This document shows positions 1-47,067 of a stretch of 64,000 nt of DNA, piece after piece. The notes under the pieces were generated by a model. The model did not search any database and was not told where the DNA came from. It saw only the letters and a list, made by a program, of their open reading frames with translations. Position numbers and translations under genes: made by a program. This DNA comes from Octopus sinensis (taxonomy: Eukaryota): positions 109,554,001-109,618,000 of the forward strand of contig NC_042998.1 of assembly GCF_006345805.1 (NCBI RefSeq), read 5' to 3'. Within the stretch, counting starts at the first letter, position 1, and each line of letters opens with the position of its first letter.

Positions 1-363
1 GATACATAAACTGCATTTGCAGAAGACATAATTAGTAAACTAATTTTACAAATATCTGTAATGACACAGGTAAGTGAAACAGTGTCCTTTATATGCAACA
101 GGGCATTTTTAACTCTAAAACGCACCCATACATATGCCATGTAAACACACCCAGTACACTGTAAAGTTGCTGGCATCCAGCTGTAGAAACCATGCCAAAA
201 CAGACATGAAGCCTGGGCAGCTCTTCAGCTGGTCAGCTCCTGTCAAACCATCCAACTCATGCCAGCATGGAAAATGGATGTTAAATGATGACTGATGACA
301 CTGTTTATTGTTTTAATATGTGATTCTTTTGACATTTTAAAAAAAGCAAATAATAACACTTAC

Positions 364-485
364 AAATTTGGCCAGCTATTTTTTCTCCAGATTGTTCCTT
401 AGAAGCACCAGTTAGAGCAGGAGCATAGGATACAATATCTTGTAAAATCTCCTGTGTTGACATGGAACAATCCTTCAAATGTTGA
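364..485 (-). CDS. ZFC3H1: ZFC3H1 exon 16 (122 nt, phase 2 to 1)
   Basis: ttttcaag|(S)QHLKDCSMSTQEILQDIVSYAPAL...AGQI|GTAAGT. Confidence 0.88.
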
Positions 486-6002: not shown

Positions 6003-6081
<79 letters not shown>

Positions 6082-11555: not shown

Positions 11556-11623
<68 letters not shown>

Positions 11624-20600: not shown

Positions 20601-23600
20601 TTAATACAACAAAACCAAACTCAATAAATACTGATTTATAGTGACATGAGCAAGATGAGGAGTAGACAAAGTAAACTGCTGAGACTATTGATTTCTTTAC
20701 CACATCCAAATCTTTATTCAATCTTTCACTGACCTTAGTCCACTGATAATTCACTTGTAAACCTTGCTGACTTGAAGTTTCTCTGATCCACAAACCTCTT
20801 ATCATTCTTTCCCTCAACACTTATAAATGAAGCATTACTCAAATTTAGCATTAAAATTAAAACTAAAATCAACCATGAACATTAACATTTCTGCCCACAT
20901 TTTCTTCAGTATTCCTCTTTCACAGGTTCATTTCTACTTGTATCATGACATTTTTTTTTCACCTAAATATCATTGTTAATGCACATCACATTTACACCAA
21001 GACAGTTTCTGTTCTTACACACTTTAACTGATACTGCTAAAACTCAGTTTTTCTGGCAGTGTACTTGTGCTTTGATGCTCATGTATGCTGACTTATTTTC
21101 ATTTGTTTATCTGAAGGACAAGGCCTTTGCAGATGCTCCAAGTCTGGTGAGATCAATACTTTTTAACAGTGCTCTTGAACAAATTCCAGTCAATGGCAGC
21201 AAGAAAAACGTGTTGGGAGTGTAATTCCAGAGGGCCAACATTCAGGAGAGGTAAGACTGGGAATACTAATTGCTATGCAAGTTGAGAGAGTAAGAGAAAT
21301 GAACGGGTCAAGACTACTGGAGTTAAGGTGGCACAAGACCAAACAGCAGAAATTGGAATATGTTGTTGAGCAACTTTACACCATTTAAATAACTTTTCTT
21401 TAGATAAAGTCTATGATGTTTGTCTGAATACAGACCCAAATGCATGATGAGTACCCCATTGTGTATCTCACCTTAACTTTGCAATGGGTACATTTTTTCC
21501 ACCTTTTGCTTATATTTTACATTCAGTGCTCAGTTTTTGCTACAATTTATATCTTACATCATACACAAGTATCATACAATCTGCTCTTCCCTCCATGACA
21601 CATTCTGTTACCAACAGGAGTAATATTTCCTTGAAGCTCTATTATAGCTAAAATCTATATATATATAAACGGCAAAATGACTGTGTGTGTGTGTGTGTGT
21701 ATCCTTTATGCAAATCCACAATTTTTCAGTTAGAGCTCACACTTTCTATGGTCATTCAAAACCATCCAAGGGTGGTCGTGCACATCTTTACATTTCCCCA
21801 GTCACCCCGCAAAGCCATTAAAAAATCAATAGAAGTGACATTTTTGTGAATTTTCTATCCAAAACCCAATCACAATGCCCGAAACTTGATATGCCAATTG
21901 AATGCCAGCTAATTATATGTGATTGGTCAGAGATTTGGACAGTACTCGCGTGTATGTGTGCACGCATGCAGCTGTATATGCCTGCACTAGTACTTTTATA
22001 AAAACATACCTCCACAACATATTAGATCATTGAAGTAACAAAAACTACCAACAACTTCTAGTGAGCCTTCTGAAAGATTTCATTTCTTGAGTGTGTCCAG
22101 TGCTAACCATTCTTACATGTAAAATCTTCCTCTGTCAGACTGCCTGAAATTTCACTGTGTATTTACATTGGGAGTACAGTATAGAGCTGTTAACCTACTC
22201 TCAGCATACTGAGCAGGATCACTTCCCATTTGGTAGTATTTGTGTTTTCTCTCTTTATCAAATATTTTAGAAATTCACCTTCAGGTCTCTCAATTCTAGA
22301 GCCTGTTTTCATATCAGAACTTAAGCCTAATTTTTCAATTGATTTGGATATGTAAACTAGGTCATCATCATACAGGAGATCACACAAACAGATGGTGATG
22401 AACGCCTCTTTCATAATTTGCAGAACTGTAATCAAGAGGTTCAGAACCAAGCTTTGATGGACACATCAGTATGGTAAATAAAATTCTGCAAACTTTCAAC
22501 AAAATTATATTGATCCATTTTATATATACACGATTTTACACACACACAAAGTGCAGACATGGCTGTGTGGTTGAGACGTTCTCTTCCCAATCAAGTAATT
22601 TCAAGTTCAGTTCCACTGCTTGAGCCTTTGGGTATCTTCTACAATAACCTCAGGTCAACCAAAGTTTCCTGAGAGGATTTGGTAGGCAGAAACTGTTTCC
22701 AAACAAAGTAATATTTTGCCATAGCTAGACATGCATTTACAGAAGACTGAAAATGAATAACCTCACTTGTGTGATGATGCTCACTTAAAACTATCACACA
22801 ATGCCTAGACAAGGATACATACAAAAACACACACGATAAGTTTCTTTCAGTTTCCCTCTATCAAATCCACTCACACAGCTTTGGTTGATCCAGGGCTATA
22901 GTAGAACACCTGCCCAAGGTGCCATGCAGTGGAACTGAACCCAAGAACATGGGTGTATGTTACCGTCAGGATATATAAACTCATTCATATGTCTAATGTG
23001 TTTATCAATATAGGTTGGACAGGGATTTATTTGAGGCAAGATTTTACAGCCAGATGCCCTTCCTGTTACTAAAATGTTTTTCAGGAAAGAGACTTTTTTT
23101 ATTCCACAAGGCTTTGAAAGCAGAAAGTTAGCAGGGAATGTAAGCATCAACACTCACAAAGATTTGCCACCCCATCACACACATATATAAGGGACTGCAG
23201 TAGAAGGTGACTTTATGCTAGGAGATGTATGAAAGAAGGGGGCCATAATCGAAAAGGTTTTTTTGCTGTAGAGGAGCTACATGCTTTCTCACATTATAAA
23301 AGAGTGGGTGGGGTGGAACTGGAAAGATATATATATACTGCAAAGTAAACTTTTTAACCAGACAACCATGCCAGCACTTTATATATACATATATATGGCT
23401 ATTTTTATTGTACTAATCCAAGAAATCTATGTAGTAATGGAATTTTTTTAGGTAAAATAAGTTTTGGGAACAAACCTGTTGACTCTCTTTTATATGACGA
23501 TCTATTTGAAGAGTTTGTCTTCCGACGCAAAGTCTCAGATCTTGACCGACTAACAGGCTTTGACTGAGAGGATTTTGAAACAGAGGGTTTAGGTTTGTTA

Positions 23601-26600
23601 TTTTCTGATGTTGAGGCTAAAGCAATGCGTCGCAGTTCTTCTATTTCATCATCCTCATCTTCAGCCTTCTGAAAAACAAAATATGGAAAGACAAACATGG
23701 CTAAAAAAAAATGGAAAGTAAATGAAAAAGACAATATACAAAAATTCAGTACTTATATAAAATTGACAATAACATATCACATTAAGAATGACAAATATTA
23801 AAGTTTTCTTTTATCTTTTTACTTGTTTCAGCTCAAGAGCACGGCTATTTAGTTAAATGGATAACAGTTCTGAATCATAATCTTACAATTTAAAGAAATT
23901 ATATTTCTCATTCATATGTGAGAAGAAATGAGATCAGGAATAACAGAGACAAAATCTGTAGCTGGTAGCCAAAATAGGGACTATATTTGGGATAATGAAT
24001 CTATTATTAATGTTCGAGTTATATAAAAAGAAGGGCTAAAACTACATAATCAACATTTAATTTTAAGACAGCTGAAGTAGACAAACATTTTCTATAATAC
24101 AACTTGAATACGTTTATTGCTTGCTGAAGTGACTTTGTATTTATTTAAACATTTATGATTTCATAGTATTCAGTCAACAGCCTTTCTAGAAACATATATG
24201 ACAACCATCTAATCATGCATTAAAAGGAAAATGTAAAATGAAATAGCAGAACCAATAAATAAATGTTGTCAGTATTTTCAAGAGTATCAAACAATCCAGC
24301 TTTTAATATCAATAAAATATCACAGGAAAAGAAATTTTTTAAAATTCTGTATAAAACATCATCATCATTTAATGTCTGGTTTCCGTGGAACTGTCTAGGC
24401 AGAAGACTACAATGTCTGTTTTGGCATGGCTTTTATGACTGGATGCCCTTCTTAATGCCAACCACCCAGTAGAGTGGACTGGGTGCTTTTTACATGGAAC
24501 CAGCAGTCAATATCAGTTTTGGCATGGTTTTTACAGTTGAATGTCCTTCCAAATGCCAGTAATTTTACAGTGTGGACCGGATACTTTTTTTTACATGGCA
24601 CCAACACTGGCAGGATCACCAAGTAGCTTTCAAAACAATGAACCTTTGAGAATGGAGGAAGCAACCTTGTTTCAGGTGATGAAAGGTTAGTGTGACAGAA
24701 ACAGGTGCCTTGCTGTAGAGAAGATATATGGTTACTTGGCCAGAGAGAGGCAAAGAGATCAAGAACGAGGACAGAAACAGGTATGTTGCTGTAGAGGAAA
24801 TACATGGTTACCCAGTCAGATGGAGAGAGCAAGAGTAGAAGAATATGAGAATGCAGGAGAGAGATGGTGGTGAAGTGCCAGGGCATACTCATAGCTAACA
24901 GGGATCAGAATACAAATGGTAGGGTATTGCCGAAGGTACATGAGTAAAAAGTAGAGACTTCACATGAATGCAAAGTGTTGGTGTGGGGAATGTAGTGACT
25001 GTGAAACCTGGGTAGAGGAACAACAGGATAGCAATGATATAGTGAGTACAGGATTAGAGAGGAAGAGATAAGCATAGGACATGAAAAAGAGGAAATGTGA
25101 GGAAGATATGTAGTTTGGTTTGTTGGGGTAGGGTGTACATGTGGGTGGAACACACAGCACTTCTAGAACTCAGTTTCACTTAAGTGAGCAGGTCTTTTCA
25201 AGAACCTTATACCACCAGACATCTTGGTCCATTGTCACATACAGAAATATTTTCTCATGAAAATTTAAAATAGGTACAGTGGTCAGGTTGACAATCATTT
25301 CTAGAGATTAAATATATGACAGTCCAAAATGAAAATTCATAAGCTATATTTTGGAAAAACTTGGAAAAAAAGATAAATAAAAACTTACGTGAGAATTAAC
25401 AAAAACTACTCTCTTATCATTACTTTCTGACCCAGATTTTGGTGGATTCCATCGACTTTTTGTTTTTTTATTAGACTCTGAAGATGATTCATGAGATTGA
25501 GAACCTTTGGAGCTAACAGAAATAGTTCGATAGGAGTCCCAATTCTTGTTGCCAGGAGACTGAGTAGATTTATCCTGAACAGCTAAATTCTCTTCTTCAT
25601 CAAGATTGGCTATTTGTTTTTGAATACTACGGTACTTTCTCAACAGGTCTTCATAGTCACTGTTTTCCTTGAGAGATGACATTTGATGAGCACCAACAGA
25701 AAACAGCGATCCACGACTCTCACGCATTCTCCGTTTCTTCTCCCATACTGAAATTAATTGTTAAGGGTAACAACAGACATTCATATACATATGAAATCAT
25801 AGTATATATATATATATATATATATACACAAACACACAACTGCGTGTGCTAATATAGACTGTAACATTAAGAACAATGTAAGAAAAACTAAAATTGGTAG
25901 GAGTAACAATTAAAAACCGGAGGACAGCTGATATGGATGGCAATTTAGAGATTATAAATTATCTGATAAACAATTAACTACATTGCTAATCATCTCTATA
26001 ACTTGTCTCAGTGTAACAGGTCTAACCATGTGTGTCTTCTTACTTTTTTCTCTTTTTCTTCTTATTTCTTTGTCCGCTTTCCATGCTAGCATGGGTTGGA
26101 CGGTTCAACTGGGGTCTGGGGAGCCCGAAAGCTGCACCAGTCCAGTCAGATCTGGCAGTGTTTCTACAGCTGGATGCCCTTCCTAACGCCAACCACTCCG
26201 AGAGTGTAGTGGGTGATTTTATGTGCCACCGACACAGGTGCCAGACGAGGCTGGCAAACGGCCACGCTTGGATGGTGTTTTTTATGTGCCACCGACACAG
26301 GTGCCAGACGAGGCTGGCAGACGGCCACGCTCGGATGGTGTTTTTATGTGCCACCGACACAGGTGCCAGATGAGGCTGGCAAACGGCCACGATCGGATGG
26401 TGCTTGTTACGTGCCCACAGCACGGAGGCCAGTCGATGCGGTACTGGCTACGGCCACGTTCGGATGGTTTTATTGTGTGCCACGTGCCACCGGCACTGGT
26501 ACCACAAAGATACAAATTCCATTGATGTTCATCTATTTTGATTTGTTTTGATTTGATTTTCACTTGCCTCAACAGGTCTTCACAAGTGTCACAAGAAGGA

Positions 26601-29600
26601 AGGTATGCACAGGTGGACTGACTACGTCCCAGGTAGGGGCCATGGGTTATGGCCTGACTAGTCTTGCCGGGTCTTCGGATGGTGTTTTTATGTGCCACCG
26701 ACACAGGTGCTAGATGAGGCTGGCGAACGGCCACGATCGGATGGTGTTTGTCATGTGCCCACAGCACGGAGGCCAGTCGATGCGGTACTGGCTACGGCCA
26801 CTTTCGGATGTGCCCACAGCACGGAGGCCAGTCGATGCGGTACTGGCTACGGCCACTTTCGGATGGTTTTCTCTTGTGTGCCACCGGCACTGGTACCACA
26901 AAGATACAAATTCCATTGATGTTCATCTATTTTGATTTGTTTTGATTTGATTTTGATTTGATTTTCACTTGCCTCAACAGGCCTTCACAAGTATCACAAG
27001 GAGGAAGGTATGCACAGGTGGACTGACTACGTCCCAGGTAGGGGCCATGGTTTATGGCCTGACTAGTCTTGCCGGGTCTTCGGATGGTGTTTTTATGTGC
27101 CACCGACACAGGTGCTAGATGAGGCTGGCGAACGGCCACGACCGGATGGTGTTTGTTATGTGCCCACAGCACGATGGCCAGTGATGCGGTACTGACTACG
27201 GCCATGTTCGGATGGATTCTTGTGTGCCACCGGCACTGGTACCACAAGCGGTACTGACTACTTTTTATGTGCCACCGACACAGGTGCTAGATGAGGCTGG
27301 CGAACGGCCACGACCGGATGGTGTTTGTTATGTGCCCACAGCACGATGGCCAGTGATGCGGTACTGACTACGGCCACGTTCGGATGGATTCTTGTGTGCC
27401 ACCGGCACTGGTACCACAAAGATACAAATTCCATTGATGTTCATCTATTTTGATTGATTTTCACTTGCCTCAGCAGGTCTTCACAAGTGTCACAAGAAGG
27501 AAGGTATGCACAGGTGGATCGACTACGTCCCAGGTAGGGGCCACGGGATATGGCCTGACTAGTCCTGCCGGGTCCTCTCATGCACAGCACACTTCCATAG
27601 GACTCGGTCTTCAGTCATTTCCTTGGTGAGACCTAAAGTTCGAAGGTCGTGCTTCACCACCTCGTCCCAGGTTTTCCTGGGTCTACCTCTTCCACAGGTT
27701 CCCTCAACTGCTAGGGTGTAGCACTTTTGCACACAACTATCTTCAGCCATTCTCGTCACATGACCATACCAGCGCAGCCTTCTCTCTTGCACACCACAAC
27801 TGACACTTCTTAGGTTCAACTTTTCTCTCAAAGTACTTACACTCTGACGATTATGAACACTGACATTACACATCCATCGGAGCATACTGGCTTCATTTCT
27901 TGCAAGCTTACGCATATCCTCAGCTGTCACGGCCCATGTTTCACTACCATGTAGCATGGCTGTACGTACACACGCATCATATAGTCTGCCTTTTACTCTT
28001 AGCGAGAGGCCTTTTGTCACCAGCAGGGGTAAGAGCTCTCTAAACTTTGCCCAGGCTATTCTTACTCTAGCAGTTACACTTTCAGCACACCCACCCCCGC
28101 TACTGACTTGGTCTCCTAGGTAGCGGAAGCTATCAACTACTTCTAGTTTGTCTCCCTGGAACGTGGTAGAAGTTGGTCTCTGCACATTTCCAGTGTTTAT
28201 TTCTCTTGAGCATCTGCCACAGACAAAAACTATTTTCTTAGTTAGCCTTCCTTTGACATTGCTGCACCTCTTATGTGTCCATAGCTTACACTTGGTGCAC
28301 CTTATAGAGTTTCTACCTACACCTTTTTTACAGATCGAGCAGGGCCATCTACCTGAAGTTGTTTGTGGTTGGTCCACCTTCCTACTTATTAGGACTTTGG
28401 TTTTGGCTAGGTTGATTCTAAGGCCCTTCGATTCTAATCCTTGTTTCCACACCTGAAACTTCTCCTCCAGTTCTGATAGTGACTCGGCAATTAGAGCAAG
28501 GTCATCAGCATATAGGAGCTCCCAGGGGCATCCTGTCTTAAATTCTTCCGTTATTGCCTGGAGGACTATGATAAATAGGAGGGGGCTGAGGACTGAACCT
28601 TGGTGGACCCCAACCTCTACCCGGAATTCTTCACTGTACTCGTTGCCAACCCTCACCTTACTAGCTGCGTCTCTGTACATGGCTCGCACAGCTCTCACTA
28701 ACCATTCATCTATCCCTAGTTTCCTCATTGACCACCAGATAAGGGATCGGGGGACCCTGTCAAAGGCTTTCTCTAAGTCAACAAAAGCCAGGTACAAGGG
28801 CTTACCTTTGGCTAGGTATTTCTCCTGCAGCTGTCTTACCAGGAATATAGCATCAGTAGTACTTTTCCCTGGCACGAACCCAAACTGCATATCATCTAAG
28901 CTAACTCTCTCTCTAATTAACTGGGCTATAACCCTCTCCGTAACCTTCATTACCTGATCCAACAGCTTGATGCCCCTGTAGTTATTTGTATCTAGGGCAT
29001 CGCCTTTACCTTTGTAGCAGTTGACTATTATGCTGCTACACCAGTCATTGGGTATGACTCCTTCGTGTATCACCTGGTTAACTATACGGGTGACTATGCT
29101 ATAGCCGACACTACCAGATATTTTGAGCATCTCTGCAGTAATTCCTGATGGGCCTGGGGCTTTCCCTGTCTTCATGCTTCTAATTGCCTTAGCTACCACG
29201 GAACTATCAACTCGGATAGCTGGTCCCTCTGTTGGGTCAACATTCGGCAGACTCTCTTTATCCCATTCATTTTCCTCATTCAGCAACCTTTCATAGTGGC
29301 GTCTCCAAGCTTCTCTCTTTGCATCCTCATTTAGCGCAAGTGAGCCATCCTCCATGCGAACACATTTCTCTCCTACCACATCTCGATTCTCTCTCACACA
29401 CTGTCTTGCAACACGAAATACCTCAAGTCTTTCATCCTCACGGCGCAGGACATTGGCAAATTTTCTTTTATCTGCTTCCCCTCTGGCTAGATAGACCTGT
29501 CTCCTAGCTTCCCTTCTGGCAGTCTGATACACTTCCCTGCTACCACCGTTCTTCCAGGCCTTCCAAGCCTGTTTCTTTTGTCTAATAGCCCTATCAACAA

Positions 29601-30401
29601 TATTGTTCCACCACCATGTTATTTTGCGTCTTAAGGGGACTTTGCACCAGCCACAGATCTGGTCAGCGGCTTTCAGCAGGTTGTCCCTCAGAAACGTCCA
29701 GTTGTCTTCTACCCCATGTGTAGCTATACCCCCTTCCACTTCGTCAAAGGCTTCAAGTAACATATCTCTAAATCTCTGTCCATTCGCAGGGTCTTTAAGC
29801 TTCCAGACCCTTCTTCTCCATGTTGGTCGTCTTCTAGTCGCCCTCTTAGTCCTGATCCTAAAGTCACTAACTACCAGTCTATGTTGTGGGGTGCATTCTT
29901 CGCCTGGGAAGGTTTTGGCATTTATAAGCAGCCATCTTTCCCTTTTTCTGGCGAGGATGTAGTCGATTTGGCTAGTATGCTGGCCCGATCGGTAGGTGAC
30001 CAGGTGGCTTGTTGGTTTCCTGAAGTTAGTGTTGCAGATCATAAGACTCTTCGCATCGCAGAACTCCAGCAGCCTGGTTCCCTCCTCGTTGCGGGAACCA
30101 TAACCGTAGCCTCCATGCACGCCATGGAAGCCCCCAGCATGTCGTCCAACATGCCCATTGAAATCACCAGCCACAAAGAGAAGGTCCCTGTCGTTCGTCA
30201 ATGAGGTGGTCTGCAGTAGGGTGTCATAGAAACTGTCTTTCTGTCCATCGGGTAGCCCTGGCTGAGGGGCATAGGCCGATATAATGGTTGCTAATCTATT
30301 ATGAAGCACTATTCTAATCTTAAGTATTCTGTCACTTACTCTGATTACCTCAATTACTCTATCTATCCATTTCTCAGCGATAAGTATACCCATGCCACCA
30401 A

Positions 30402-30449
<48 letters not shown>

Positions 30450-33400
30450 AAAAATGATACAGCTTAACCAGAAATTTGTAGTGAATCTGCAATGAAATCA
30501 AGGAACAGAAAAAAAACTTATTTTGGCCTACTTAACATACTATGTCAACCCACTGGTTTTACAATATAAAGTGCTTGTTTTTAAGCATTCATATTTTAAT
30601 TAAAACTGCCCTTTATAATTTTATGCAAAATGTTTTTATTAGATTCCAAACACCAACTTCAATGAATAAAATTAGTTATGTTACTAAACCCATCAGAAGT
30701 CTAGTAATTTACAAAAATATTTTAAAGAAGCATAGTGTATTTCATTAGAAATACCTTCATGGAAAGATCGATCCTGAGTTTTTAATAAAGGCAATAATAA
30801 TAATGACTATTATATTGTTGAACTTAAAGTATGTTCATAATTTTTTCTTCACAATGCTTTCAAATATGACCTGTGTGAAGGTGATCTAAATATTGTTAAT
30901 GTGGATAATTGGGTTAAGTATGTATATAAAAATATTTCATAGACTCAGCAGACGAATTATCAAATGCATAGGTTTAAATAAAACCATTTGCTCTGAAGCT
31001 GAATTATACAGAAATATGCAAATCAAGGAATAAACAGGGAAATTTAAAATTAGAAAAAAAAAATAGTGCTCTTAAAAGAGAAAAAACATATAAGGCAATG
31101 GAGATATCACTATGGTAGATTACTCTCTCCATAAAATATATAACCGAAGTGTCATCAGAAATCATAACTAGGGAGGAGAAAGATACTATTTATCAAGGGA
31201 ATGATGGGTACCAAATTTTGATTTTATTAAGACTTGAATGAGTGATGTCTAATTTATTATATTTAATTTGAGGCAAAGTATCTAATTAAACAATTATTTT
31301 TTTAAACAGCTTTAAGTGTTAGAATAACAAAGAACTTAAAATGCAGAAAAAATTTATCATACTTGATCTAAAACACTAGAGCTTGCTTTAGAGATGACAA
31401 TACTATGTTTGTTACATCACAACTCTTCCTCCAACCATTCAATTACATTTTGAATAATTGAATTCAACTATTCTTTTCTTATTAATTACATTTTTTGTTA
31501 ACATGAGATATTTTTAAGCTATGTGTGTGTATATATATATAAAGTTAATCCAAACAACAAAACACAAAAAAACACAACAACGCGAGGACATGGAACAAAT
31601 ATAGTATTATTGGACGCTCAGGAAAGAAGGATGGTTTAACGTTTTGAGCGGAGCTCTTCATCGGAAACATAGAAGGAAAGATCCAGAGAAGGGAAGACAG
31701 AGGAAACAAAAAAAATCGCCAACGGTACACACGAGGTCACATTTTATGCAAAACATGTATATACACACACACAAAACTGGTTTCTTTCAGTTTCCATCTA
31801 CCAAATTCATTGACAAGACTGGTCAGTCCAAGGCTATAGTAGGCGACACTTTCCCATGGTGCCATGCAGTGTGACTGAACCCGGAACCATGTGGTTGGGA
31901 AGCAAGCTTCTTACCACATAGCCACATCTGGTTTCAAGAGAAAATACTTTGAACAGGATTAAAGTTGACTTAGGGTTAAATAACGACAAATTGTCAATGT
32001 AGTATGAACAACAGCAATATAGAGAAGAGGTCAACAATTTGTAATTATGTATTTTTATCTCAATACACAAGATAAAAATAAAAGCAAAAAAGGCCAGTTT
32101 AATAGTGCCTTGTGAACATCAAGGGAGACAATCCTGTAAAACATATGGGGAAGTCAATTTTAAAAATCATACTTGATCTAAAACACTAGAGCTTGCTTTA
32201 GAGATGACAATACTACTTTTGTTACATCACAACTCTTCCTCCAACCATGGTAGTACTAGTCAATATTGTTTGTCAAAAAGGAGGATTAGTCACAACTGGA
32301 AAAGTCTTATCAAAAGTCTTTTATAAAATTGATAACAATGAAAGTTGTGTTCATGACAGATTGATAAGCTGAGATGGTAAGAAACTTGTGACAAAGCATT
32401 TTGATCACATTTTTGTCACTAATTCTATTAGAAAATTCACATCACAACTTAGCATCACTGTTAATCTATGAAAATCATATATTATCACGCTTATAACCTT
32501 TCAAATAAAATCATGTTTCTGAAAAGGTGGAAGGAGTCAAAATTAGAGTGGGGCAGTCAAGATATGCCTAACTTACATGTTTTTAATAGAATGTAATCTT
32601 TATATCTAGTTCATTTTGATAATGAAAAACAAAAAGGCGAAGGACAGAATGTCTAACTAAAGATTTGTCTACCAAGTTGTAAAATGCACAAAAGAAGTTA
32701 CAATTGTTTCTAACACAAGCATAAGGACTGACATTTAGGGGAAGGGAGTTAGCCGTTATCAACCTAGTATTTGACTATAACTTATTTTATTAGCCTTGGA
32801 TGGATGAAAGGCAAAGCTGACCTCAGCTGGATTTGAAACTAGGTTGTAAAGAGTCATAAGTAAATAACACATGGCATTTTGTTAGACACAATGCTGCCAG
32901 AGAAGAAATTCCTTAAAGAATTGTGTGAGAAACTCTGAAAATAATAGGACCCATATCAAAATGTTCACAAGGAGAGTGCTTTATGCCACCTCACCATATC
33001 AATCTGTAATGTATCTCTGTAAATTTAAAAGTGTTATATTTAAAGCAGAAGTTTTCTCACCAATTTTGCAAGTGAGTATTGTTTAGACTGATGATCTGAA
33101 ATATTTCAACAGTAACCAATGTAAAAAAAAATCCTGCTATTTTAATGGTAAAGAACTTATGAAAACTAGGAGTGGACAACGTCACTCCTTAAATCAGATA
33201 ACTTCCACAACACATAGAGATCAAATAACAACTAGTGATAATTTTCATGAAAATATAGAGGCCAATACTAAAGATTGTACTGAAGTAAACATCTACCAAA
33301 AATCAAACCAGTGTTATTGTAATGTTCAGGTCATAGTAATGGACAAATGGCAGCATGAAACTAGAAACTTTTCTGTTAAGTGGTTGGGATGACAGAATGT

Positions 33401-36400
33401 TGAAACAAGAAAAATCAAGTTTACTAAGTGTCTGGTAAAGTCCAATGCAATCCTAAATTTCAACTAACCTCATACAAATATAAACATATGTACATGTATG
33501 TATACAATGTAAGTACACAAACATGTATGTGAATGTATTTTTGTTCATCCATTTTTCTTTCCTGCATGGGTTATCTGAATATATTATTCAGGTGTTGTTT
33601 TATAGCCAGATGCCCTTTCAGTCACTAATCTGCACCTGTTTTCAAGGAAGAGGTCTATTCACACATCTTCAAAGCTATAAAGCAAAGGCAATTTTGCTGA
33701 TATAATAGCAACAACACCATTAGCTCACAATTTTCAAAGTGCAAGTGTAAACTCAGACATTTTATATTCTTATACAAGAGATAGATATAACAAGCTTCTT
33801 TCAGTTTCCCTCTACCAAATTCACTCTCAAGGCTTTGGTTGGCCCAACGCTATAGTAGACTTGCCTAAAGCATCAAACAGTGGGACTCAACCATATGGTA
33901 AGGAAGCTAACTTCTTAACTACACATCTATGCCTTCACTTATATGTGAGTGTGTGTACATACATACACACTATATATCATCATCATCGTTTAATGTCTGT
34001 TTTCCATGGGTTGGACGGTTCGACTGGGGTCTGGTAAGCCAGGAGGCTGCACCAGGCTCCAGTCTGATCTGGTAGTGTTTCTATAGCTGGATGCCCTTCC
34101 TAATGCCAACCACTCCATGAGTGTAGTGGGTGCTTTTTAGCTGCCACTGACACAGGAGCCAGAGGAGGCTGGCAACAGACACAATTGGTTGGTGTGTATG
34201 TATATATATGTATATTGGTCCAGGTGACACATAAAAAGGACCCAGTACACTTCAAGTGGTTGGCATCGGGAAGGGCATCACCCATAGAAACTATGCCAGA
34301 ACAATGTAGCCTAGTGGCCCCTGGCCTTACCAGCTTGCCAAACCATCGAACTCATCCCAGCATGGAAAACAGACATTAAATGAGGATATATATATATATA
34401 TATACATACATAAACATGTATTCATATATAAATACATAACCTCAACAGTCATTCCGGTTAGCTATGCACTTGGCAGAGACTAAATAGATCTGTTTGATTC
34501 TTTGGAACCCTATCACTACTAAATATAAATATACATATAAACACACATCTATAATTTAACATTTATGTTACATGCTGGAATGTATTGGACAGTATGAAGA
34601 TCCAATGGGCCCAAGATCTGCATTGCACTTAAGTGTCAGCTTTAGCATGGTTTCCATGGCTGGATGCCCTTCCTGATGCCAACCACATTACAACATATAC
34701 TAGATATATTTTACACAACCAGCACTAGTGTTGCCTTGTAGCCTACTAGATGAGGCCCAAAGGGAGCAACTTTATGCTAAGAGATGAGCAGAGATACGTA
34801 AAGAATGAGAAAAGAAGCAGATTTCTAGCTGTAGAGGAACTACATAACTACTCACATTTTAAAAGGGTGGGAAGCAATTAAAATAGTGGTGATGACATAT
34901 CAGAGTGGACCTTCAAGGTATGTGATAGGAAGGAACGAGCGGGATAGAGAGAAGCAAGGAGTAGGGACATAGGGGATGTTTAATAGTGCAGAGCAGCAGC
35001 AGAATATTGAAGATACAGTAAACAGAAGGACAAGAGAGATAAGTTGTTGGGTTGCAAGAGTGGATGGGGAAGAGTAAGACAATTCGGTGACAAGGGGGTA
35101 AGTGATCATGGAAAGTGTGTGATGTATGTGTATATATATATCTTTCAGTAATGTATATGAGAAAAACGGTACTCTTCTAACTAAAGACATTGGTGTTAGA
35201 GATACGGCCATTTCATTCTCACTGTCAAAAATGCAGTGAACCAATGTCTAGTCAGTCGACATTATTGCTCACAAGAGTGCAACATAATATAAATTAACTG
35301 AATCCACTGATACGTAATTTTTATATTGTCATAAAGTGTTCCTCAGCAACCAGTAAATCAACATGTGCGTGTTCGATAATGGAAGTAATTGATATTGATA
35401 ATATCTATTTGGGCTTTGCACTGGTACTACTTTTACAGGTTTAGAACATCTATATACATATTTTTGTAAAAGAATTGCAATATATCTTATATTATAAAAT
35501 AAAAACCATTTTATTCAATAAAGAACACTTTTGATGGAATTATGAGCAAATATTTTCCTTTTTAATAACGTTATTAGTCAAAAGAGGAGGTGGGTGGATG
35601 TAAGAAGCCTTATAATTTATGAAGTTTTTCCTAGAAAATCAATACTGCTGTTCAGGTCAGCCCTAATGGAACAGGCATCATATGAGTAATAAGCATTCTA
35701 CTCGTGACTATACATATATCTGTTACAACATTATGCAAGTTTGTTTCTTTTTAATTGGGTATTATTTTTCAGAAAAGATCAAATGGCCTCTGTATGAAAG
35801 TAATGGAGTTACACGTTATCGATGGTGACTGTCAGAGAAAGAAAAGAAGGCGTGCACAAATCAAAATGAAAGTAATAGTTCAAAATAAATCGAAAGCAGC
35901 GTGTGAGAGAAAGAGAGAGAGTAGAGGAATCAAATGTGGTTGCTCGAGGGAAGACTGTGGGAACGGACATGCGATGCGCATGGCGGATGACAGGTAAAGA
36001 TGTGCAAAGCGATCCTGCGGGCAAAGGAAAATACGGGAGGGGAGAGCGGTAAATGCTAGCTGATGTTAGGAGGGCTAACAAAGAACACCAACAAGTGGAG
36101 AGTTGTCTAAATCACGAAAGTAAAGAAAAATAAACGCGAAGCTACGTTAAATTATTTTGTCCTTATAGGGTAGACCAGTGATTAAGTTACACTCGATATC
36201 AGAATGACTAGAGACCAAACATTTAGTGCTGTTCCAACGGCTCATCCGCAATAATTCCACGACAAAAGTTAATAGTTTTACATTAATGAAAATAGTATCA
36301 GTATCATTATAATGATAATTATTATTAAGACGTTCTTCGAACAATATGATAATAATGTTTCCAGTGAGCTACAAAAATATAGAAAACGTTTAGCCTTCTA

Positions 36401-39237
36401 GAAAATAATTCTAAGATATCTAATATTAGAATAGCCTGCATTGAGTGAAAAGAAGTTATAGTTTGGGCAAAACTATAAATTCAATATCTGAGATATATAA
36501 TTTATTCTATTTGTTACTCCTATTGCTTAGCCACAGGTCAATCACGAGTGAACAGACTAAAAGCCACTACAGGATTTGGCGGGGGAGCTTATGAGCCAGC
36601 CTTTTCCTTCGAAAACAATAGTGAGATTTTCTTTAGCAGGTCAAGAAATTACTCACCGATATGAATTATAATGTAGTAGTGAACAGAATAAATATAATTT
36701 GTTTTAAAAGAGCAGAATGTTGCCATTGAGGAAAACTAGTATTTTTCAGTAAAAATAATTTTTAAAAAGGACTAGAAGAATGGAAGGAGGAGAGACTCAG
36801 TAAGACAAATAATCCCAGCAAGGGAACTAAATAGAGGTTTTTAAATATGCTAGAAATAGAAACTAAGTCTACGTCAAGCAACGACAGTGGAGACGGTACA
36901 CACTATTTTCGAATCCAATTTAATTTTAGTTACCACAGACTCATATTCGTCATAAGACATATTCCTCAGATTGTTTGAAAACAGTTCATGCATGGCTAAT
37001 TCAACAGGCTACCTTTTGGTACCATTGTATGCTGTCGTCGCTTTATAAATGAAATTACAAGCAAGCATAAAACCAAACTTAATGTTAAAAAAAAAACTAT
37101 CAATGACAAAGTTAATACCAAAGTTGGAATCTATAATACTATAAGAAAAAATAGAGACTATATTAACCATTGCTTCTAAGGATTAAAAACTTGTTCAAAC
37201 ATAAAATTTAAGTAGACAGGAAAGATTACATTGAATGAAATTTATATATAAGAATTGAAAAGTTTACTCGAAATAATCTGGTAACGATTTAGTATCTAAA
37301 TTCCTTCCAACTTTTAATTAAAACTTGAGGAAAACTACAAAATTATTTTAGTAGTAACATAAGTTACAAATGAATATTTCATTTAAATTATGGTAATATG
37401 GGAATAAACAAGAGATTGAGAATTAACTTCTCTGTTGCTGACAGTCGAAACCATAGTTCAAGCAAAAAATTGCCTTTAATATGCGGTCGATCGATCTGCA
37501 AGCAATAACAACCTAAAACCATCAAATTACACCCTACTGTCTTGGAAAGATAGGCCATAATGTAGGATTTAATTTTAAACATACAAAAAGGTAACGATTG
37601 GAACGCCTTTCAACAGAAGTCTGTTTACTTGATAAACAACAAACTTAGTTTCTAAAACAGCGAACGAGCAAGAAAAAGTCACATTACATTTAAATATCAA
37701 AATGGCAACAGCATGAAAAAGATCACATTTTATGGTTTTATTTTTAAATATGTGATTTTTTTTTCCACTTCATCTTTTCCCTTTGATTCCTACAGACCTA
37801 AGAAATGGTCAGAACTGTGGTACCAAAATGTTTACAACTTCCTTGTATTCACTAATATTCCTTAATAACAGACATTTCTAGAGAAACCTATTAAGTTACA
37901 TTAGAACAAGAGGAATTGCTTACAATATAAAAGTATTATAAAATACGAGTCCTTTTTATTTTCTGTAAAATATGTGGCAGTTTGGCCACGCAAGATACAT
38001 GTCTACTTTGCATTTATCTTTCTAGAGTCGAACTCTTCAAGAAAATGTTAAAATAATTATTATATCTATTCATACAGATATATCTTGAAAAAAAAAATAC
38101 ATATAACATGGAAAGGAGAACTGATGATTGTTATAAAAAAAAAAATTTGAATTTAAATTTTTGCTTTCACAACTCAGCTACAAATACTTATTGTGAATTA
38201 CATTTCATGTTTACTGCGTCAATACAAACTTAACCTACGAAAGGTTTCTAAAATGGTTTGTACCTAATATTAAATGACTACTGTCAATTTTTTCTTTTTT
38301 TTTTACTTTAAGATAATCAACAATGTTAACGATATAAAATTTTTTAAAGAATTTAAAAATAATCGGATATGTCGCTCGTCATATACGTTATAATGTAAAC
38401 AAACATCTTACCGTTAACTTATACAATATAGAAATGTATATAAAACATTGCAATTATCCGAGGAGAGAATGAATACAGCAATAAATGTTTAGCAGTTTAA
38501 TGTTGATTACTCAAGAATGAAAAAAAAGAGTGAAAAAAAAGGATACATTGAAAATTACTGCGAGGAGTCATAGGACCGTATCGACGATTGTCTTGCCAAG
38601 GCCCAGGAGGAAGACCATCTCTGTTACCAGGAGGCATCTGACCATGTCCTCCAGGGCCAAGGTTCTCAACACCCGGTCCACCTGGACACCTTGGAGGCGA
38701 AGGACGATAAGGGTGGTGAGACATCGGTGGCATTTGTTGAGGAATTCGTGACGGGTGATGTGGTCTTAAAGGTGGCGGAGGTGCCCAGTAACCACCACTA
38801 ACACTTGTATTAGAATTACTACCACACATGTCAGAAGACATAGGGTTGCTGTTGTCTCTACGGCCACCCGGATTCATCATACCACAAGATAACGAAGGTG
38901 GCGGGGGTGGTCGCCGTTTTTTGAAGTACCCACTTGGGCTGTCTTCACCGCTACGGTTTGGAGACAATGGGAAAGGAGCACCATTACCACAGGAAGGATC
39001 TCTCATATTGTTACCAAATTTATCAAAAATACCTCTGGAATGATTGTTAAACAATGGAGGTTTCCTACAATAATGTTTGTTGTTGTTGTTGTTGTTGTTT
39101 TCTACTGGTTTGTTCTCGTCTGTTTCACCACGGCCTTCATTACGAACTATTCCGTCTTCATCGTCATCTGAGAGTTCCCCTTCTTCTTTCGCTGAATAAT
39201 ACTTCGGGTTTTTCACAACAATTAACATGTCTTCCAT
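364..39237 (-). CDS. ZFC3H1: ZFC3H1 orthologue (zinc finger C3H1 domain protein, PAXT exosome adaptor); 16 coding exons in window, 3'-partial
   Basis: Phase-compatible exon chain. Peptides match recalled vertebrate ZFC3H1 motifs in order: KEEGELSD, YEDLLRKYRSIQ, EELRRIALAS, DNYEEVAMEIDSD, EEEEKLLRAQLLQS, IPKHPSVVINL, RRRSM, PYKSPLLHFRAYRFSPFLRTKE, CQYDLQGTCNDQQCKSQH. Confidence 0.93.
1624..1755 (-). CDS. ZFC3H1: ZFC3H1 exon 15 (132 nt, phase 2 to 2), C3H1 zinc finger
   Basis: FSPFLRTKENLSLSSQSFSHKLNCKNILCQYDLQGTCNDQQCK; C-x7-C-x4-C-x3-H is completed in exon 16. Confidence 0.92.
2765..2874 (-). CDS. ZFC3H1: ZFC3H1 exon 14 (110 nt, phase 0 to 2)
   Basis: ttctttag|IPYPKSDN...YKPYKSPLLHFRAY(R)|GTAAGT. 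Confidence 0.9.
3259..4075. mobile_element. Rearranged copy of the same piggyBac family: forward left end plus inverted right end
   Basis: 3259-3443 matches 17518-17695; ~3449-4075 is the reverse complement of ~18120-18766, including MPGKPTKWGIKVWKICEANTGY. Confidence 0.85.
4412..4501 (-). CDS. ZFC3H1: ZFC3H1 exon 13 (90 nt, phase 0 to 0)
   Basis: atttttag|HEKMQNLIEPAQSKAVSWENFSHLTPPSDS|GTAAGT; supported by splice signals and frame only. Confidence 0.72.
4885..5230 (-). mobile_element. 5'-truncated RTE 3'-end copy
   Basis: cctgggtctacctcttccacag matches 27675-27697 of the long element, joined to the family 3' terminus and (CAT)n tail. Similar short copies at ~165-300, 14717-14910, 24357-24620, 33975-34180, 34250-34390. 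Confidence 0.75.
5349..5720 (-). CDS. ZFC3H1: ZFC3H1 exon 12 (372 nt, phase 0 to 0)
   Basis: ttgcag|LKTKIEDIPHKRQQLQQMQQQYALMLQKL...SRRRSMISLN...KTIL|GTAAAT. Confidence 0.88.
6984..7154 (-). CDS. ZFC3H1: ZFC3H1 exon 11 (171 nt, phase 0 to 0)
   Basis: acttcag|IQLVKIQLAHNESTVLQLEKNLLQIGKRLYG...SHNQ|GTAAGT. Confidence 0.85.
8746..8920 (-). CDS. ZFC3H1: ZFC3H1 exon 10 (175 nt, phase 2 to 0), coiled coil
   Basis: gtttcag|KLMLQDQRELKALVTQASK...DIKIKDK|GTAAGA. Confidence 0.85.
9048..9181 (-). CDS. ZFC3H1: ZFC3H1 exon 9 (134 nt, phase 0 to 2)
   Basis: ttttacag|TKKNSMESKD...DRGFRELEEKYVAQ(R); donor AG|GTAGAT. Confidence 0.8.
9995..10465 (+). mobile_element. 5'-truncated RTE 3'-end copy
   Basis: MTNDQDLWRYVVIKKIQQD resembles the RTE ORF C-terminus; ends gcatggaaagcggctgttaaacaatgatgatgatg. 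Confidence 0.75.
10480..11090 (-). mobile_element. Old LINE RT C-terminal remnant (Jockey/CR1-group-like)
   Basis: SVNRNLENILQWRHNNPISFNNTDT resembles the xDLxxIxxWxxxNxxxFNxxKT motif; heavily degenerate. Confidence 0.4.
11636..11776 (-). CDS. ZFC3H1: ZFC3H1 exon 8 (141 nt, phase 0 to 0)
   Basis: ttgcag|IPKHPSVVINLAEDSTDSE...GIDQFLKDARKSVE|GTGAAT. Confidence 0.9.
12274..12396 (-). CDS. ZFC3H1: ZFC3H1 exon 7 (123 nt, phase 0 to 0)
   Basis: ttttatag|VDDTSGKESPFSPRSQSPHNTDTNLPDKKQPPQQQPYCAPK|GTATGT; not in the ORF track, found from splice signals and open frame. Confidence 0.75.
13149..13607 (-). CDS. ZFC3H1: ZFC3H1 exon 6 (459 nt, phase 0 to 0), ~20-residue poly-Pro
   Basis: catatag|SSISELPP...PPLPPPPPLPDEKPPEKPPEPDYEEDEEEEKLLRAQLLQSMAIRR...KAI; donor GTAAGT. 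Confidence 0.9.
15048..15215 (-). CDS. ZFC3H1: ZFC3H1 exon 5 (168 nt, phase 0 to 0, probable GC donor)
   Basis: catctag|PPSCLSQLNE...QDNYEEVAMEIDSDD...PSLM; ATG|GCAAGT is the only nearby donor in phase with exon 6. Confidence 0.8.
15923..16164 (-). CDS. ZFC3H1: ZFC3H1 exon 4 (242 nt, phase 1 to 0)
   Basis: ctttcag|(V)LREQS...NQRREINKILEVDDPVEQIERLAKYL...NNK; donor AAG|GTGTGT. Confidence 0.85.
17518..18766 (+). mobile_element. Non-autonomous (internally deleted) piggyBac element
   Basis: TTAA at 17514-17517 and 18767-18770; TIRs CCCTTTCGATAC / CCCTTTCGTTAC; transposase remnant KQYMLRKPTKWGIKVWKICEANTGY at ~18108-18183. Confidence 0.9.
18790..20250 (-). mobile_element. Degenerate hAT (Charlie/Buster, GTF2IRD2-like) transposase fossil
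   Basis: Frameshifted remnants FSLVLGEST, LISAASDRAPAIM (cf. TDGAPAM), EQLAAKY, DEWMHDLMFL (cf. WLCDLAFL). Confidence 0.65.
23476..23668 (-). CDS. ZFC3H1: ZFC3H1 exon 3 (193 nt, phase 0 to 1)
   Basis: ttttcag|KAEDEDDEIEELRRIALAS...KREST; donor AG|GTTTGT. Confidence 0.85.
25389..25747 (-). CDS. ZFC3H1: ZFC3H1 exon 2 (359 nt, phase 1 to 0)
   Basis: Acceptor CCCTTAAC-AATTAATTT-CAG; (L)WEKKRRMRES...DYEDLLRKYRSIQKQIANLDEEE...NSH; donor GTAAGT. Confidence 0.88.
25748..25767 (-). promoter_or_regulatory. U12-type branch point and 3' splice site of intron 1
   Basis: CCCTTAAC, 9 nt, then CAG; no polypyrimidine tract. Confidence 0.85.
26217..27575. repeat. Higher-order tandem array in the RTE 3' UTR (~60-bp subunits within a ~400-bp unit x3)
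   Basis: ttttatgtgccaccgacacaggtg... subunits; three copies of the gtaccacaaagatacaaattcc...gactagtc block, each including the RQD-stop codons. Confidence 0.9.
27559..30402 (-). CDS. RTE ORF: partial APE endonuclease, reverse transcriptase, PHD-like finger
   Basis: SAYAPQ, GDFNGHVG, SQIDYIL, QHRLVV (APE); QFGF, FVDLEKAFDRV, GVHQGSVLSP, YADD at 28501-28512, FRYLG (RT). The first ~33 aa of the track ORF come from flanking (TA)n sequence. Confidence 0.95.
31356..32248. repeat. 83-bp direct repeat pair (31356-31438 and 32166-32248)
   Basis: atcatacttgatctaaaacactagagc...ccaaccat twice, 2 mismatches, offset 810 bp. Confidence 0.9.
31634..31668 (-). ncRNA. Degenerate minimal hammerhead motif (core mutated)
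   Basis: GTTT CCGATGA A GAGC-TCC-GCTC AAAA CGT T AAAC: perfect stems I and II, U4C and G12A core changes. Confidence 0.45.
38538..38546 (-). promoter_or_regulatory. U12-type 5' splice site of intron 1
   Basis: GTATCCTTT matches the minor-intron donor consensus RTATCCTTT. Confidence 0.85.
38547..39237 (-). CDS. ZFC3H1: ZFC3H1 coding exon 1 (691 nt, ends phase 1)
   Basis: AAACATGG start; MEDMLIVVKNPKYYSAKEEGELSDDDEDG, then Pro/Gly-rich low complexity; donor T|GTATCCTTT. Confidence 0.88.
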
Positions 39238-42233: not shown

Positions 42234-43038
42234 TATACATGACCGACTGAAACTGCAAGCATTTACTAATTTCCACTACCACCTTCTCAATACATGACTT
42301 TAAACTGAAACTGCAAGCGGTTCTGAACTCGGAACCTTGTAAAGCTTATTTCAGATTTATCAGTATTGTTGCTATTATTGTTTAATCTTAGATTAACGCA
42401 TATAAAACTCACCTACGGTCAAAGGTATTTCGGTCTTGGTCATCATTTTTTTAAACTATATTCCATCCTCTAAATACAGTAGTTTTGGTATGTTAGAAAT
42501 TTGATCGCTATTTCTACATGTTGAAAGTTAACTCAAATTTACGTTAATATTAGGTTAAAGCCGCCATTCAACCAGGCTTCCAGCACATGTACCCCACACC
42601 AGAGAACTATTCACAAATACTGGGTAGAGTGGCGACTATGCAAGATTTTTTAACCGTATACTCGACCTCAAAGATAATAAATAAATAAATGAACCGATCA
42701 TAATACATTGTACTACTTCTCTTCTCGTCATGAGTTCAAAATTCAAACACCTTTTGTTCCCATAATAGCTTTAAAAAAAATTTTAAGCACCCTCCACAGC
42801 ATTCCCCGAAAAATCCACCCGACTGGTTGGTATGAAGTCGTTCGTCAAAAGACATCGTCGAACCTGCAGACTTGCTATCTCCACTCTCTGTCATTTGTAC
42901 TGCTACTACTGTGGCAACTGCAGGGGCATAGCCAGCTTCTAAAGTTAATGGGAGCAAGTATATAAAAAGAAAGATGCTATAACACATACCAAACAATTTT
43001 AAACTCATTTCATTTGTTCATGTTTCAGTAACAACGTC
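42234..43038. repeat. Left arm of a long inverted duplication
   Basis: 42234-42750 is the reverse complement of 46947-47536; 42770-43038 is the reverse complement of 44816-45085; mid-90s percent identity by eye. Confidence 0.93.
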
Positions 43039-46923: not shown

Positions 46924-47024
46924 GAAGAAAAGCGTGGAAGAAAATGTGTTTGAATTTTGAACTCATGACGAGAAGAGGAGTAGTACAATGTATTAATGAT
47001 CGGTTCATTTATTTATTTATTCAT

Positions 47025-47067
<43 letters not shown>

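What the first reader, a model, noticed from the sequence alone, without database searches (positions are those of the whole stretch)
25748..38546. 12.8-kb U12-type first intron in the exosome adaptor ZFC3H1
The donor GTATCCTTT and branch point CCCTTAAC 9 nt before CAG, with no pyrimidine tract, both fit the minor spliceosome, and the flanking exons join in frame (QLWEK). Gene predictors often mis-model such introns. Minor introns splice slowly, and retained ones are known nuclear-exosome substrates. A minor intron in a PAXT subunit could therefore form a negative feedback loop in which the protein limits its own pre-mRNA (inference). I do not know whether the vertebrate gene has a U12 intron at this position.
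Basis: partly seen in the sequence, partly recalled or inferred. Interest (0 to 1): 0.7.

Follow-up and report, generated by a model that had tools for sequence, protein, structure and literature searches.

The report
Conserved minor (U12) intron in octopus ZFC3H1
The 12.8-kb gap between the first two coding exons of an octopus ZFC3H1 gene is a genuine minor-spliceosome (U12-type) intron, but ZFC3H1 is already listed as a minor-intron gene in human and mouse, so this is a correct and ordinary finding, and the proposed self-regulation loop is untested.

Summary
On the minus strand, coding exon 1 (39237-38547) ends in AAT|GTATCCTTT. The intron (38546-25748, 12,799 nt) ends in CCCTTAAC-AATTAATTT-CAG, and exon 2 starts at 25747. 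The join is in frame (SNFQ|LWEKKRR, phase 1).

The gene is an octopus ZFC3H1. Its first 414 residues are 95% identical to the Octopus bimaculoides RefSeq model, which uses the same junction. Sixteen collinear exons lie in the window, and only intron 1 has minor-type signals.

Argonauta, Solemya and Patella also have a U12-type intron at the matching place, the first two in the codon before the conserved WEK motif. Cuttlefish-type mRNA contigs carry the spliced junction. Olthof et al. 2019 already list ZFC3H1/Zfc3h1 as a minor-intron gene in human and mouse (GCT|GTATCCTTA).

The intron is long because it holds a 5'-truncated LINE, tandem repeats and SINE-like repeats. No orthologous exon lies inside it.

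- "No pyrimidine tract" is not diagnostic in this AT-rich gene.
- "Mis-modelled by predictors" does not hold in four annotated relatives.
- The exosome feedback loop remains inference; I found no paper that tests it.

Verdict: real, correctly interpreted, already a known kind. Low interest.

The parts
38547..39237 (-). ZFC3H1 coding exon 1 (ATG at 39237-39235; 691 nt, ends in phase 1)
   Evidence: ORF and translation. 92.6% tblastn identity to residues 1-228 of O. bimaculoides XP_014777510.1. The KEEGELSDDD motif is shared with Patella and Solemya.
38538..38546 (-). U12-type 5' splice site GTATCCTTT
   Evidence: Weight-matrix score 15.0 bits, 72nd percentile of 76 human U12 sites, best site on the strand.
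25748..38546 (-). Intron 1, 12,799 nt, GT-AG, U12-type, phase 1
   Evidence: Splice-aware mapping of P0003. No orthologous exon inside.
25760..25767 (-). Branch-point sequence CCCTTAAC (7 of 8 matches to TCCTTAAC); presumed branch A at 25761, 13 nt from the 3' end of the intron
   Evidence: Weight-matrix score 10.1 bits, 30th percentile of known sites. The same CCCTTAAC core occurs in listed human or mouse minor introns such as TCTN1, SRSF10 and PHB2.
25748..25750 (-). 3' splice site CAG
25389..25747 (-). Coding exon 2 (359 nt), begins TA TGG GAG (LWEKKRR), followed by a U2-type donor GTAAGT
23476..23668 (-). Coding exon 3, with a tandem CAG/AAG acceptor at 23671-23666
   Evidence: P0003 (isoform X2) lacks the K that the proximal acceptor would add.
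362..16164 (-). Coding exons 4-16, collinear with P0003 residues 411-1225. Includes the zf-C3H1 exon at 1624-1755. The gene runs off the low end of the window.
   Evidence: Pfam PF10650, E = 2.7e-5, 24.3 bits against a cut-off of 20.9.
27562..30409 (-). 5'-truncated LINE inside intron 1, in the same orientation as the gene. It lies in a 990-codon open frame (27562-30531) with reverse-transcriptase and endonuclease domains.
   Evidence: Pfam RVT_1 E = 2.2e-32; Exo_endo_phos_2 E = 1.3e-5, 25.5 bits, just under its 27.4-bit cut-off. A (TA)18 run at 30410-30445 borders it.
26217..27419 (.). Tandem-repeat array inside intron 1 (periods 63, 172 and 405)

Best explanation
This is an ancestral U12-type (GT-AG subtype) intron at the first coding-intron position of an octopus ZFC3H1 gene. 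ZFC3H1 encodes the scaffold of the PAXT nuclear-exosome adaptor.

Inferred mechanism, from established knowledge of minor splicing:
- U11 snRNA pairs with the 5' splice site GTATCCTTT.
- U12 snRNA pairs with CCCTTAAC and bulges the branch A 13 nt from the CAG.
- The minor spliceosome joins exon 1 to exon 2 in phase 1, inside the codon that precedes the conserved WE[KR] motif.

Other molluscs have a U12-type intron at the matching place, and ZFC3H1 is a catalogued minor-intron gene in human and mouse, most probably through the same intron. In this octopus the intron has grown to 12.8 kb through insertion of a LINE, tandem repeats and SINE-like repeats.

Its persistence is most simply explained by inheritance of an old minor intron. 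A regulatory role is possible but not shown.
For: Sequence signals and frame.

Gene identity:
- 95% identity (394/414) to O. bimaculoides 'zinc finger C3H1 domain-containing protein-like', with the identical junction.
- Sixteen collinear exons.
- Pfam zf-C3H1 above its cut-off.
- Weak match of the octopus orthologue P0003 to S. pombe Red1 chains in the PDB.

Intron 1 is the only one of 15 with minor-type signals.

Orthologous introns, all phase 1:
- Argonauta hians: CCT|GTATCCTTTT ... AACCTTAAC, then 12 nt ending in AG; 4,323 nt.
- Solemya velum: GAT|GTATCCTG ... ATCTTAAC, then 12 nt ending in AG; 3,780 nt.
- Patella vulgata: GAG|GTATCCTTTT ... GTCCTTAAT, then 9 nt ending in AG; 3,093 nt.

Spliced mRNA contigs from a cuttlefish-type cephalopod read CCA T|AT TGG GAA, with no intron.

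Human and mouse ZFC3H1 minor intron, from Olthof et al. 2019 (PMC6717393):
- Human: chr12:71657302-71663012, 5' splice site GCT|GTATCCTTA, branch site GTTTCCTTAATA.
- Mouse: chr10:115385808-115390649, 5' splice site GCT|GTATCCTTA, branch site GTTTCCTTAATG.

Fish and frog ZFC3H1 proteins have [SN]F-WERSH where cephalopods have NF[QP][LY]-WEKK.

Octopus sinensis and molluscs in general are reported to hold minor introns (PMC10639083).
Against: - No RNA-seq from this species was available, so use of the junction rests on the orthologue model and on relatives' transcripts.
- No minor snRNA gene lies in the window (no Rfam match), so presence of the machinery rests on the literature.
- The branch site has C where the consensus has T at its first position.
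- The Solemya sites are weak (5th and 9th percentiles).
- Identity of position with the vertebrate intron is inferred. It rests on the protein motif, on the three exon bases GCT (compatible with AGC T|TC for Ser-Phe), and on my recollection that the human intron is intron 1. No vertebrate DNA could be read here.
Confidence: 0.92

Rival explanations
1. Regulatory reading. The slow minor intron makes ZFC3H1 pre-mRNA a substrate of the nuclear exosome through PAXT, so the protein limits its own expression by negative feedback.
For: - U12 introns are about twofold more retained than their neighbours and are stabilised by RRP41 or DIS3 knock-down (PMC4066798).
- PAXT-sensitive multi-exon mRNAs are enriched in retained introns, and PAXT autoregulation through LENG8 mRNA has been suggested (PMC13391367).
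- A 5' intronic-polyadenylation isoform of human ZFC3H1 and a feedback idea have been noted (PMC12548281).
- EXOSC1, EXOSC2 and ZCCHC8 are also listed as minor-intron genes, and EXOSC5 and EXOSC9 appear in the expression table that lists them alongside.
- A U12-type intron sits at the matching place in four molluscs, and ZFC3H1 is also a minor-intron gene in mammals.
- The octopus intron carries 10 sense-strand AATAAA hexamers and a sense-oriented LINE.
Against: - No experiment or paper addresses it.
- A pan-eukaryotic survey finds minor introns no better conserved than major ones and favours neutral explanations (PMC10639083).
- About 700 human genes carry such introns, so one in ZFC3H1 is not special in itself.
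Confidence: 0.15
2. The GT-AG intron is in fact removed by the major (U2) spliceosome, and the likeness to U12 signals is incidental.
For: The termini are GT-AG. The pyrimidine content upstream of the 3' splice site (13/20) is within the range of the gene's U2 introns.
Against: - The donor mismatches the U2 consensus at -1, +4, +5 and +6 but matches the U12 consensus 9 of 9.
- The branch motif and its spacing (12 nt after the motif) recur in Argonauta and Solemya, and a similar motif with 9 nt recurs in Patella.
- The mammalian gene is classed as a minor-intron gene.
Confidence: 0.03
3. The 12.8-kb interval holds further, unannotated ZFC3H1 exons or a nested gene, so the simple exon 1-exon 2 join is only one of several forms.
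For: The interval is long and has several open frames, including one of 990 codons.
Against: - The long frame is a LINE reverse transcriptase.
- The other frames of 100 codons or more have no Pfam family above cut-off.
- No part of the Patella, Solemya or O. bimaculoides protein maps inside.
- The relatives' introns are 3-4 kb.
Confidence: 0.05

Closest known systems
Minor intron of human ZFC3H1 and mouse Zfc3h1 (MIDB; Olthof et al. 2019, PMC6717393)
   Same: - Same gene family.
- GT-AG U12 subtype with near-identical 5' splice site (GTATCCTTA against GTATCCTTT) and a TCCTTAAT-type branch site.
- The exon ends in T, compatible with phase 1 in the codon before the conserved W of WE[KR].
- Both are long introns near the 5' end of the gene (5.7 kb, 4.8 kb and 12.8 kb).
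   Different: - The octopus intron is two to three times longer and carries a LINE.
- The branch site is CCCTTAAC rather than TCCTTAAT.
- Exact positional identity was not checked on vertebrate DNA.
U12-type introns of octopus and other molluscs, catalogued genome-wide with intronIC (Larue and Roy 2023, PMC10639083)
   Same: An ordinary member of that class: consensus signals, phase 1 (the favoured phase of minor introns), shared with other animals.
   Different: I did not look in that paper's data for this intron or for a species-level list, so whether this exact intron is in their set is unknown.
Autoregulatory circuits built on inefficient or unproductive splicing: U11-48K and U11/U12-65K (PMC5473595), and the proposed LENG8/PAXT autoregulation (PMC13391367)
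   Same: An RNA-processing factor whose own transcript carries a feature that its pathway acts on.
   Different: For ZFC3H1 there is no evidence that the intron-containing RNA is a PAXT target or that its level responds to the protein.

Membership tests
U12-type (minor spliceosome) intron, GT-AG subtype | 5' splice site matching |RTATCCTTT | tested here: met
   GTATCCTTT, 9 of 9. 72nd percentile of 76 human U12 sites.
U12-type (minor spliceosome) intron, GT-AG subtype | Branch-point sequence close to TCCTTAAC near the 3' end | tested here: met
   CCCTTAAC, 7 of 8. 30th percentile of known sites. The same core occurs in listed minor introns.
U12-type (minor spliceosome) intron, GT-AG subtype | Short distance from branch A to 3' splice site (about 10-15 nt; range from my own knowledge) | tested here: met
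   13 nt here, 13 nt in Argonauta and Solemya, 10 nt in Patella.
U12-type (minor spliceosome) intron, GT-AG subtype | No marked polypyrimidine tract | tested here: inconclusive
   13 of 20 pyrimidines, against 11-17 in the gene's U2 introns.
U12-type (minor spliceosome) intron, GT-AG subtype | Orthologous intron is U12-type in other lineages | tested here: met
   Argonauta, Solemya and Patella DNA. Human and mouse from the MIDB tables; positional identity there is inferred.
U12-type (minor spliceosome) intron, GT-AG subtype | The junction is used in mature mRNA | tested here: inconclusive
   The O. bimaculoides RefSeq model has the same junction. Cuttlefish-type RNA-seq contigs are spliced there. 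No transcript data for the window's own species.
U12-type (minor spliceosome) intron, GT-AG subtype | Removal depends on U11, U12, U4atac and U6atac snRNPs, and the organism has them | not testable with these tools
   No snRNA gene in the window. The literature reports minor introns in Octopus sinensis and molluscs.
ZFC3H1 / Red1 (PAXT/MTREC scaffold) | zf-C3H1 zinc finger (Pfam PF10650) | tested here: met
   24.3 bits against a cut-off of 20.9 in the exon at 1624-1755. Red1 PDB chains match the same region of the orthologue P0003.
ZFC3H1 / Red1 (PAXT/MTREC scaffold) | Orthology to named ZFC3H1 proteins along the whole length | tested here: met
   95% identity to the O. bimaculoides protein. 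Collinear matches to Patella and Solemya. Named vertebrate relatives.
ZFC3H1 / Red1 (PAXT/MTREC scaffold) | C-terminal HAT/TPR repeats | not tested
   That part of the gene lies outside the window. It is present in the orthologue P0003.
Autoregulatory retained-intron loop | Intron-containing transcript rises when the encoded factor or the exosome is depleted | not testable with these tools
   No expression data. No paper found.

The most novel reading that the evidence does not exclude
The minor intron at this place in ZFC3H1, kept in molluscs and probably in vertebrates, is one arm of a homeostatic circuit. Slow removal leaves intron-1-containing or prematurely polyadenylated ZFC3H1 RNA in the nucleus. 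PAXT and the exosome then destroy it, so PAXT activity sets the output of its own scaffold gene. This could act together with the minor introns in ZCCHC8 and in exosome core subunit genes.
Probability: 0.13. Interest if true: 0.55.

Novelty: already known. Interest (0 to 1): 0.2.

Why it matters
As an annotation it matters little. It confirms that an octopus ZFC3H1 gene keeps a minor intron at a place where three other molluscs also have one, and ZFC3H1 is a listed minor-intron gene in mammals. If the mammalian intron is the same one, as the protein motif suggests, it predates the protostome-deuterostome split. The window also shows how such an intron can triple in length by transposon insertion while its short splice signals stay intact.

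The feedback idea would matter somewhat if true. It would link the minor spliceosome to control of nuclear RNA decay capacity, and both exosome adaptors' scaffold genes (ZFC3H1 and ZCCHC8) carry minor introns in mammals. That idea is better tested in human cell data than in this sequence.

Tried and rejected
- Protein search with the N-terminal 414 residues found nothing. A concatenated-exon query and then a profile were needed.
- PDB search with the N-terminus gave only a chance hit.
- The O. bimaculoides and Mya arenaria loci were not on record, so no second octopus genome could be compared.
- The first profile job exceeded 1,200 positions and was rerun with the Patella protein alone.
I did not try to get round that.
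- Supplements of Moyer 2020, Niemela 2014 and Olthof 2020 held nothing usable.
- A second GTATCCTT on the minus strand at 22818, inside intron 3, has no exon of the O. bimaculoides model next to it and is at chance frequency. Rejected.
- A possible U2 donor, TTGA|GTAATC, 43 nt inside the intron would break the frame (read). Rejected.
- Rfam and tRNA scans of the window were empty.

Full report
**1. Observation**

The gene lies on the minus strand.
- An open frame starts at ATG 39237 and runs to 38547. It is followed directly by GTATCCTTT (38546-38538).
- At the other end the sequence reads ...GTTACCCTTAACAATTAATTTCAG|TATGGGAGAAG. CCCTTAAC lies at 25767-25760, nine bases follow, then CAG at 25750-25748, and exon 2 starts at 25747.
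- Joining the exons gives ...TTT CAA T|TA TGG GAG AAG, which reads SNFQLWEKKRR, in frame and in phase 1. Reading through the donor meets a stop after 16 codons.

**2. More than chance**

- GTATCCTTT occurs once on this strand in 64 kb, against about 0.8 expected on both strands together.
- I built weight matrices from 76 human U12 5' splice sites and branch sites in Table S2 of Olthof et al. 2019.
- The window's 5' splice site scores 15.0 bits. That is the 72nd percentile of the known sites and the best-scoring position on the whole minus strand.
- The branch site scores 10.1 bits, the 30th percentile. Nine positions on the strand score as high or higher.
- CCTTAAC followed by YAG within 6-13 nt occurs twice on the strand.
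- By my estimate from these counts, both signals falling at the two ends of one frame-preserving gap is a roughly 1e-8 event.

**3. Which gene**

- The frame at 1623-1901 matches Pfam zf-C3H1 above its cut-off.
- A concatenated-exon query found Patella vulgata 'zinc finger C3H1 domain-containing protein' and a Solemya velum protein.
- A profile search then found Octopus bimaculoides XP_014777510.1 and an Argonauta hians protein of the same name.
- The window's first 414 residues are 95% identical (394/414) to the O. bimaculoides protein, which contains the very junction SNFQLWEKKRR.
- That protein maps to 16 collinear exons from 39237 down to 362. They cover residues 1-1225 of 1965, so the gene leaves the window at its low end.
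- The window therefore comes from an Octopus species close to, but not identical with, O. bimaculoides.
- The octopus orthologue P0003 also weakly matches Red1, the fission-yeast counterpart, in the PDB.

**4. Only intron 1 is minor-type**

Of the 15 introns in the window, 13 have GTAAGT-like donors, one is GC-AG, and only intron 1 has the U12 donor. Pyrimidine content before the acceptor is 13/20 for intron 1 and 11-17/20 for the others.

**5. Relatives**

I fetched the loci of three mollusc orthologues and located their first coding intron.

| Species | 5' splice site | Branch site and spacing | Exon 2 start | Length |
|---|---|---|---|---|
| Argonauta hians | CCT\|GTATCCTTTT | AACCTTAAC + 12 nt ending AG | TG TGG GAG | 4,323 nt |
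| Solemya velum | GAT\|GTATCCTG | ATCTTAAC + 12 nt ending AG | TA TGG GAG | 3,780 nt |
| Patella vulgata | GAG\|GTATCCTTTT | GTCCTTAAT + 9 nt ending AG | CT CCA | 3,093 nt |

- All three are phase 1.
- In the cephalopods and Solemya the split codon is the one before the conserved WEK.
- In Patella the WEK motif is absent, but the intron sits at the matching place, 24 residues before the FEDLL motif.
- All of these gene models use the U12 junction, so mis-modelling is not an issue in these annotations.
- Three RNA-seq contigs encode an uninterrupted 1,990-residue orthologue. Their 90%-identity cluster includes a Sepia (Acanthosepion) pharaonis protein. They read CCA T|AT TGG GAA, that is, spliced at the same place.

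**6. Vertebrates**

The supplementary tables of Olthof et al. 2019 (PMC6717393) list ZFC3H1/Zfc3h1 as a minor-intron gene in both species:
- Human: chr12:71657302-71663012, 5,711 nt, GCT|GTATCCTTA, branch site GTTTCCTTAATA.
- Mouse: chr10:115385808-115390649, 4,842 nt, same 5' splice site, branch site GTTTCCTTAATG.

An exhaustive HMMER search with the Patella protein returned fish and frog 'zinc finger C3H1 domain-containing' proteins. Their N-termini read ...[SN]F-WERSH..., where cephalopods read ...NF[QP][LY]-WEKK....

The three exon bases GCT before the human donor fit AGC T|TC (Ser, Phe). That would be phase 1 in the codon before the conserved Trp, as in octopus.

This identity of position is an inference. 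I could not read vertebrate DNA, and that the human intron is intron 1 rests on my memory of the gene's coordinates.

**7. What fills the intron**

- A 990-codon open frame at 27562-30531, on the gene's strand, matches reverse transcriptase (E = 2e-32). It also matches an endonuclease domain, at 25.5 bits just under Pfam's 27.4-bit cut-off.
- It begins behind a (TA)18 run, so the element is 5'-truncated but otherwise open.
- Next to it lies a tandem array at 26217-27419.
- About 1.1 kb more matches repeats found elsewhere in the window.
- The other frames of 100 codons or more have no family above cut-off. One weak PHD-like hit at 35812-36111 may be another LINE fragment.
- No orthologue residues map inside the intron.
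- The 3-4 kb introns of the relatives suggest the octopus intron grew by insertion.

**8. Mechanism**

- Shown: the signals, the frame, U12-type signals at the matching place in three other molluscs, and gene identity.
- Inferred from established knowledge of minor splicing: U11 pairs with the 5' splice site. U12 pairs with the branch site. The short branch-to-acceptor distance substitutes for a pyrimidine tract.

**9. The feedback idea**

General support exists.
- U12 introns are retained about twofold more than their neighbours and are stabilised by exosome knock-down (PMC4066798).
- PAXT-sensitive multi-exon mRNAs are enriched in retained introns, and PAXT autoregulation has been suggested through LENG8 mRNA (PMC13391367).
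- A 5' intronic-polyadenylation isoform of human ZFC3H1 has been noted, together with a feedback idea (PMC12548281).
- In the same tables ZCCHC8, EXOSC1 and EXOSC2 are listed as minor-intron genes, and EXOSC5 and EXOSC9 appear in the expression table that lists them alongside.

Against it:
- None of four literature searches found a test or proposal for this intron.
- The largest survey finds minor introns no better conserved than major ones and favours neutral explanations (PMC10639083).

I put the loop at about 0.13-0.15.

**10. Verdict**

The finding is real and the structural interpretation is right. The intron belongs to a well-known class, and ZFC3H1 is already catalogued as a minor-intron gene in mammals. 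Its presence in octopus is what inheritance predicts. Novelty: already known. Interest is low, and the only open element is the untested regulatory idea.

Noticed in passing
window 27562-30531 (-): A 990-codon open frame inside intron 1 encodes a LINE reverse transcriptase with an endonuclease-like domain and a PHD-like finger. It is in the same orientation as ZFC3H1 and is 5'-truncated at a (TA)18 run. The long intact frame suggests a young insertion.
   Followed up: partly
window 26217-27419: A tandem-repeat array (periods 63, 172 and 405; 87-99% matches) lies directly downstream of the LINE in the gene's orientation. Its GC-rich unit resembles short repeats elsewhere in the window (e.g. 34104-34376, 10217-10405).
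   Followed up: partly
window 15042-15047 (-): Intron 5 of the gene has a GC-AG donor (ATG|GCAAGT) instead of GT.
   Followed up: no
window 23666-23671 (-): Exon 3 has a tandem CAG/AAG acceptor. The O. bimaculoides isoform X2 lacks the Lys that the proximal site would add, so both sites are probably used.
   Followed up: partly
window 42263-43044 versus 44810-45073 and 46936-47489: A large inverted repeat (96-97% complementary) lies 3-8 kb upstream of the ZFC3H1 start. Its right arm is split by about 1.9 kb of inserted sequence. Nature unknown, perhaps a transposon with long terminal inverted repeats.
   Followed up: partly
window 22811-22818 (-): A second GTATCCTT on the gene's strand, inside intron 3, with no exon of the O. 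bimaculoides model next to it. It is at the frequency expected by chance.
   Followed up: yes
window about 13440-13510 and 39075-39095 (-): Coding homopolymer runs differ from O. bimaculoides. There are 22 Pro codons in exon 6, where the relative's run is interrupted by a Leu, and 7 Asn codons in exon 1 against 5. These are likely length-variable coding microsatellites.
   Followed up: no
literature (Olthof et al. 2019 supplementary tables): Besides ZFC3H1, the NEXT scaffold ZCCHC8 and the exosome core subunits EXOSC1 and EXOSC2 are listed as minor-intron genes in human and mouse. EXOSC5 and EXOSC9 appear in the expression table that lists them alongside.
   Followed up: partly
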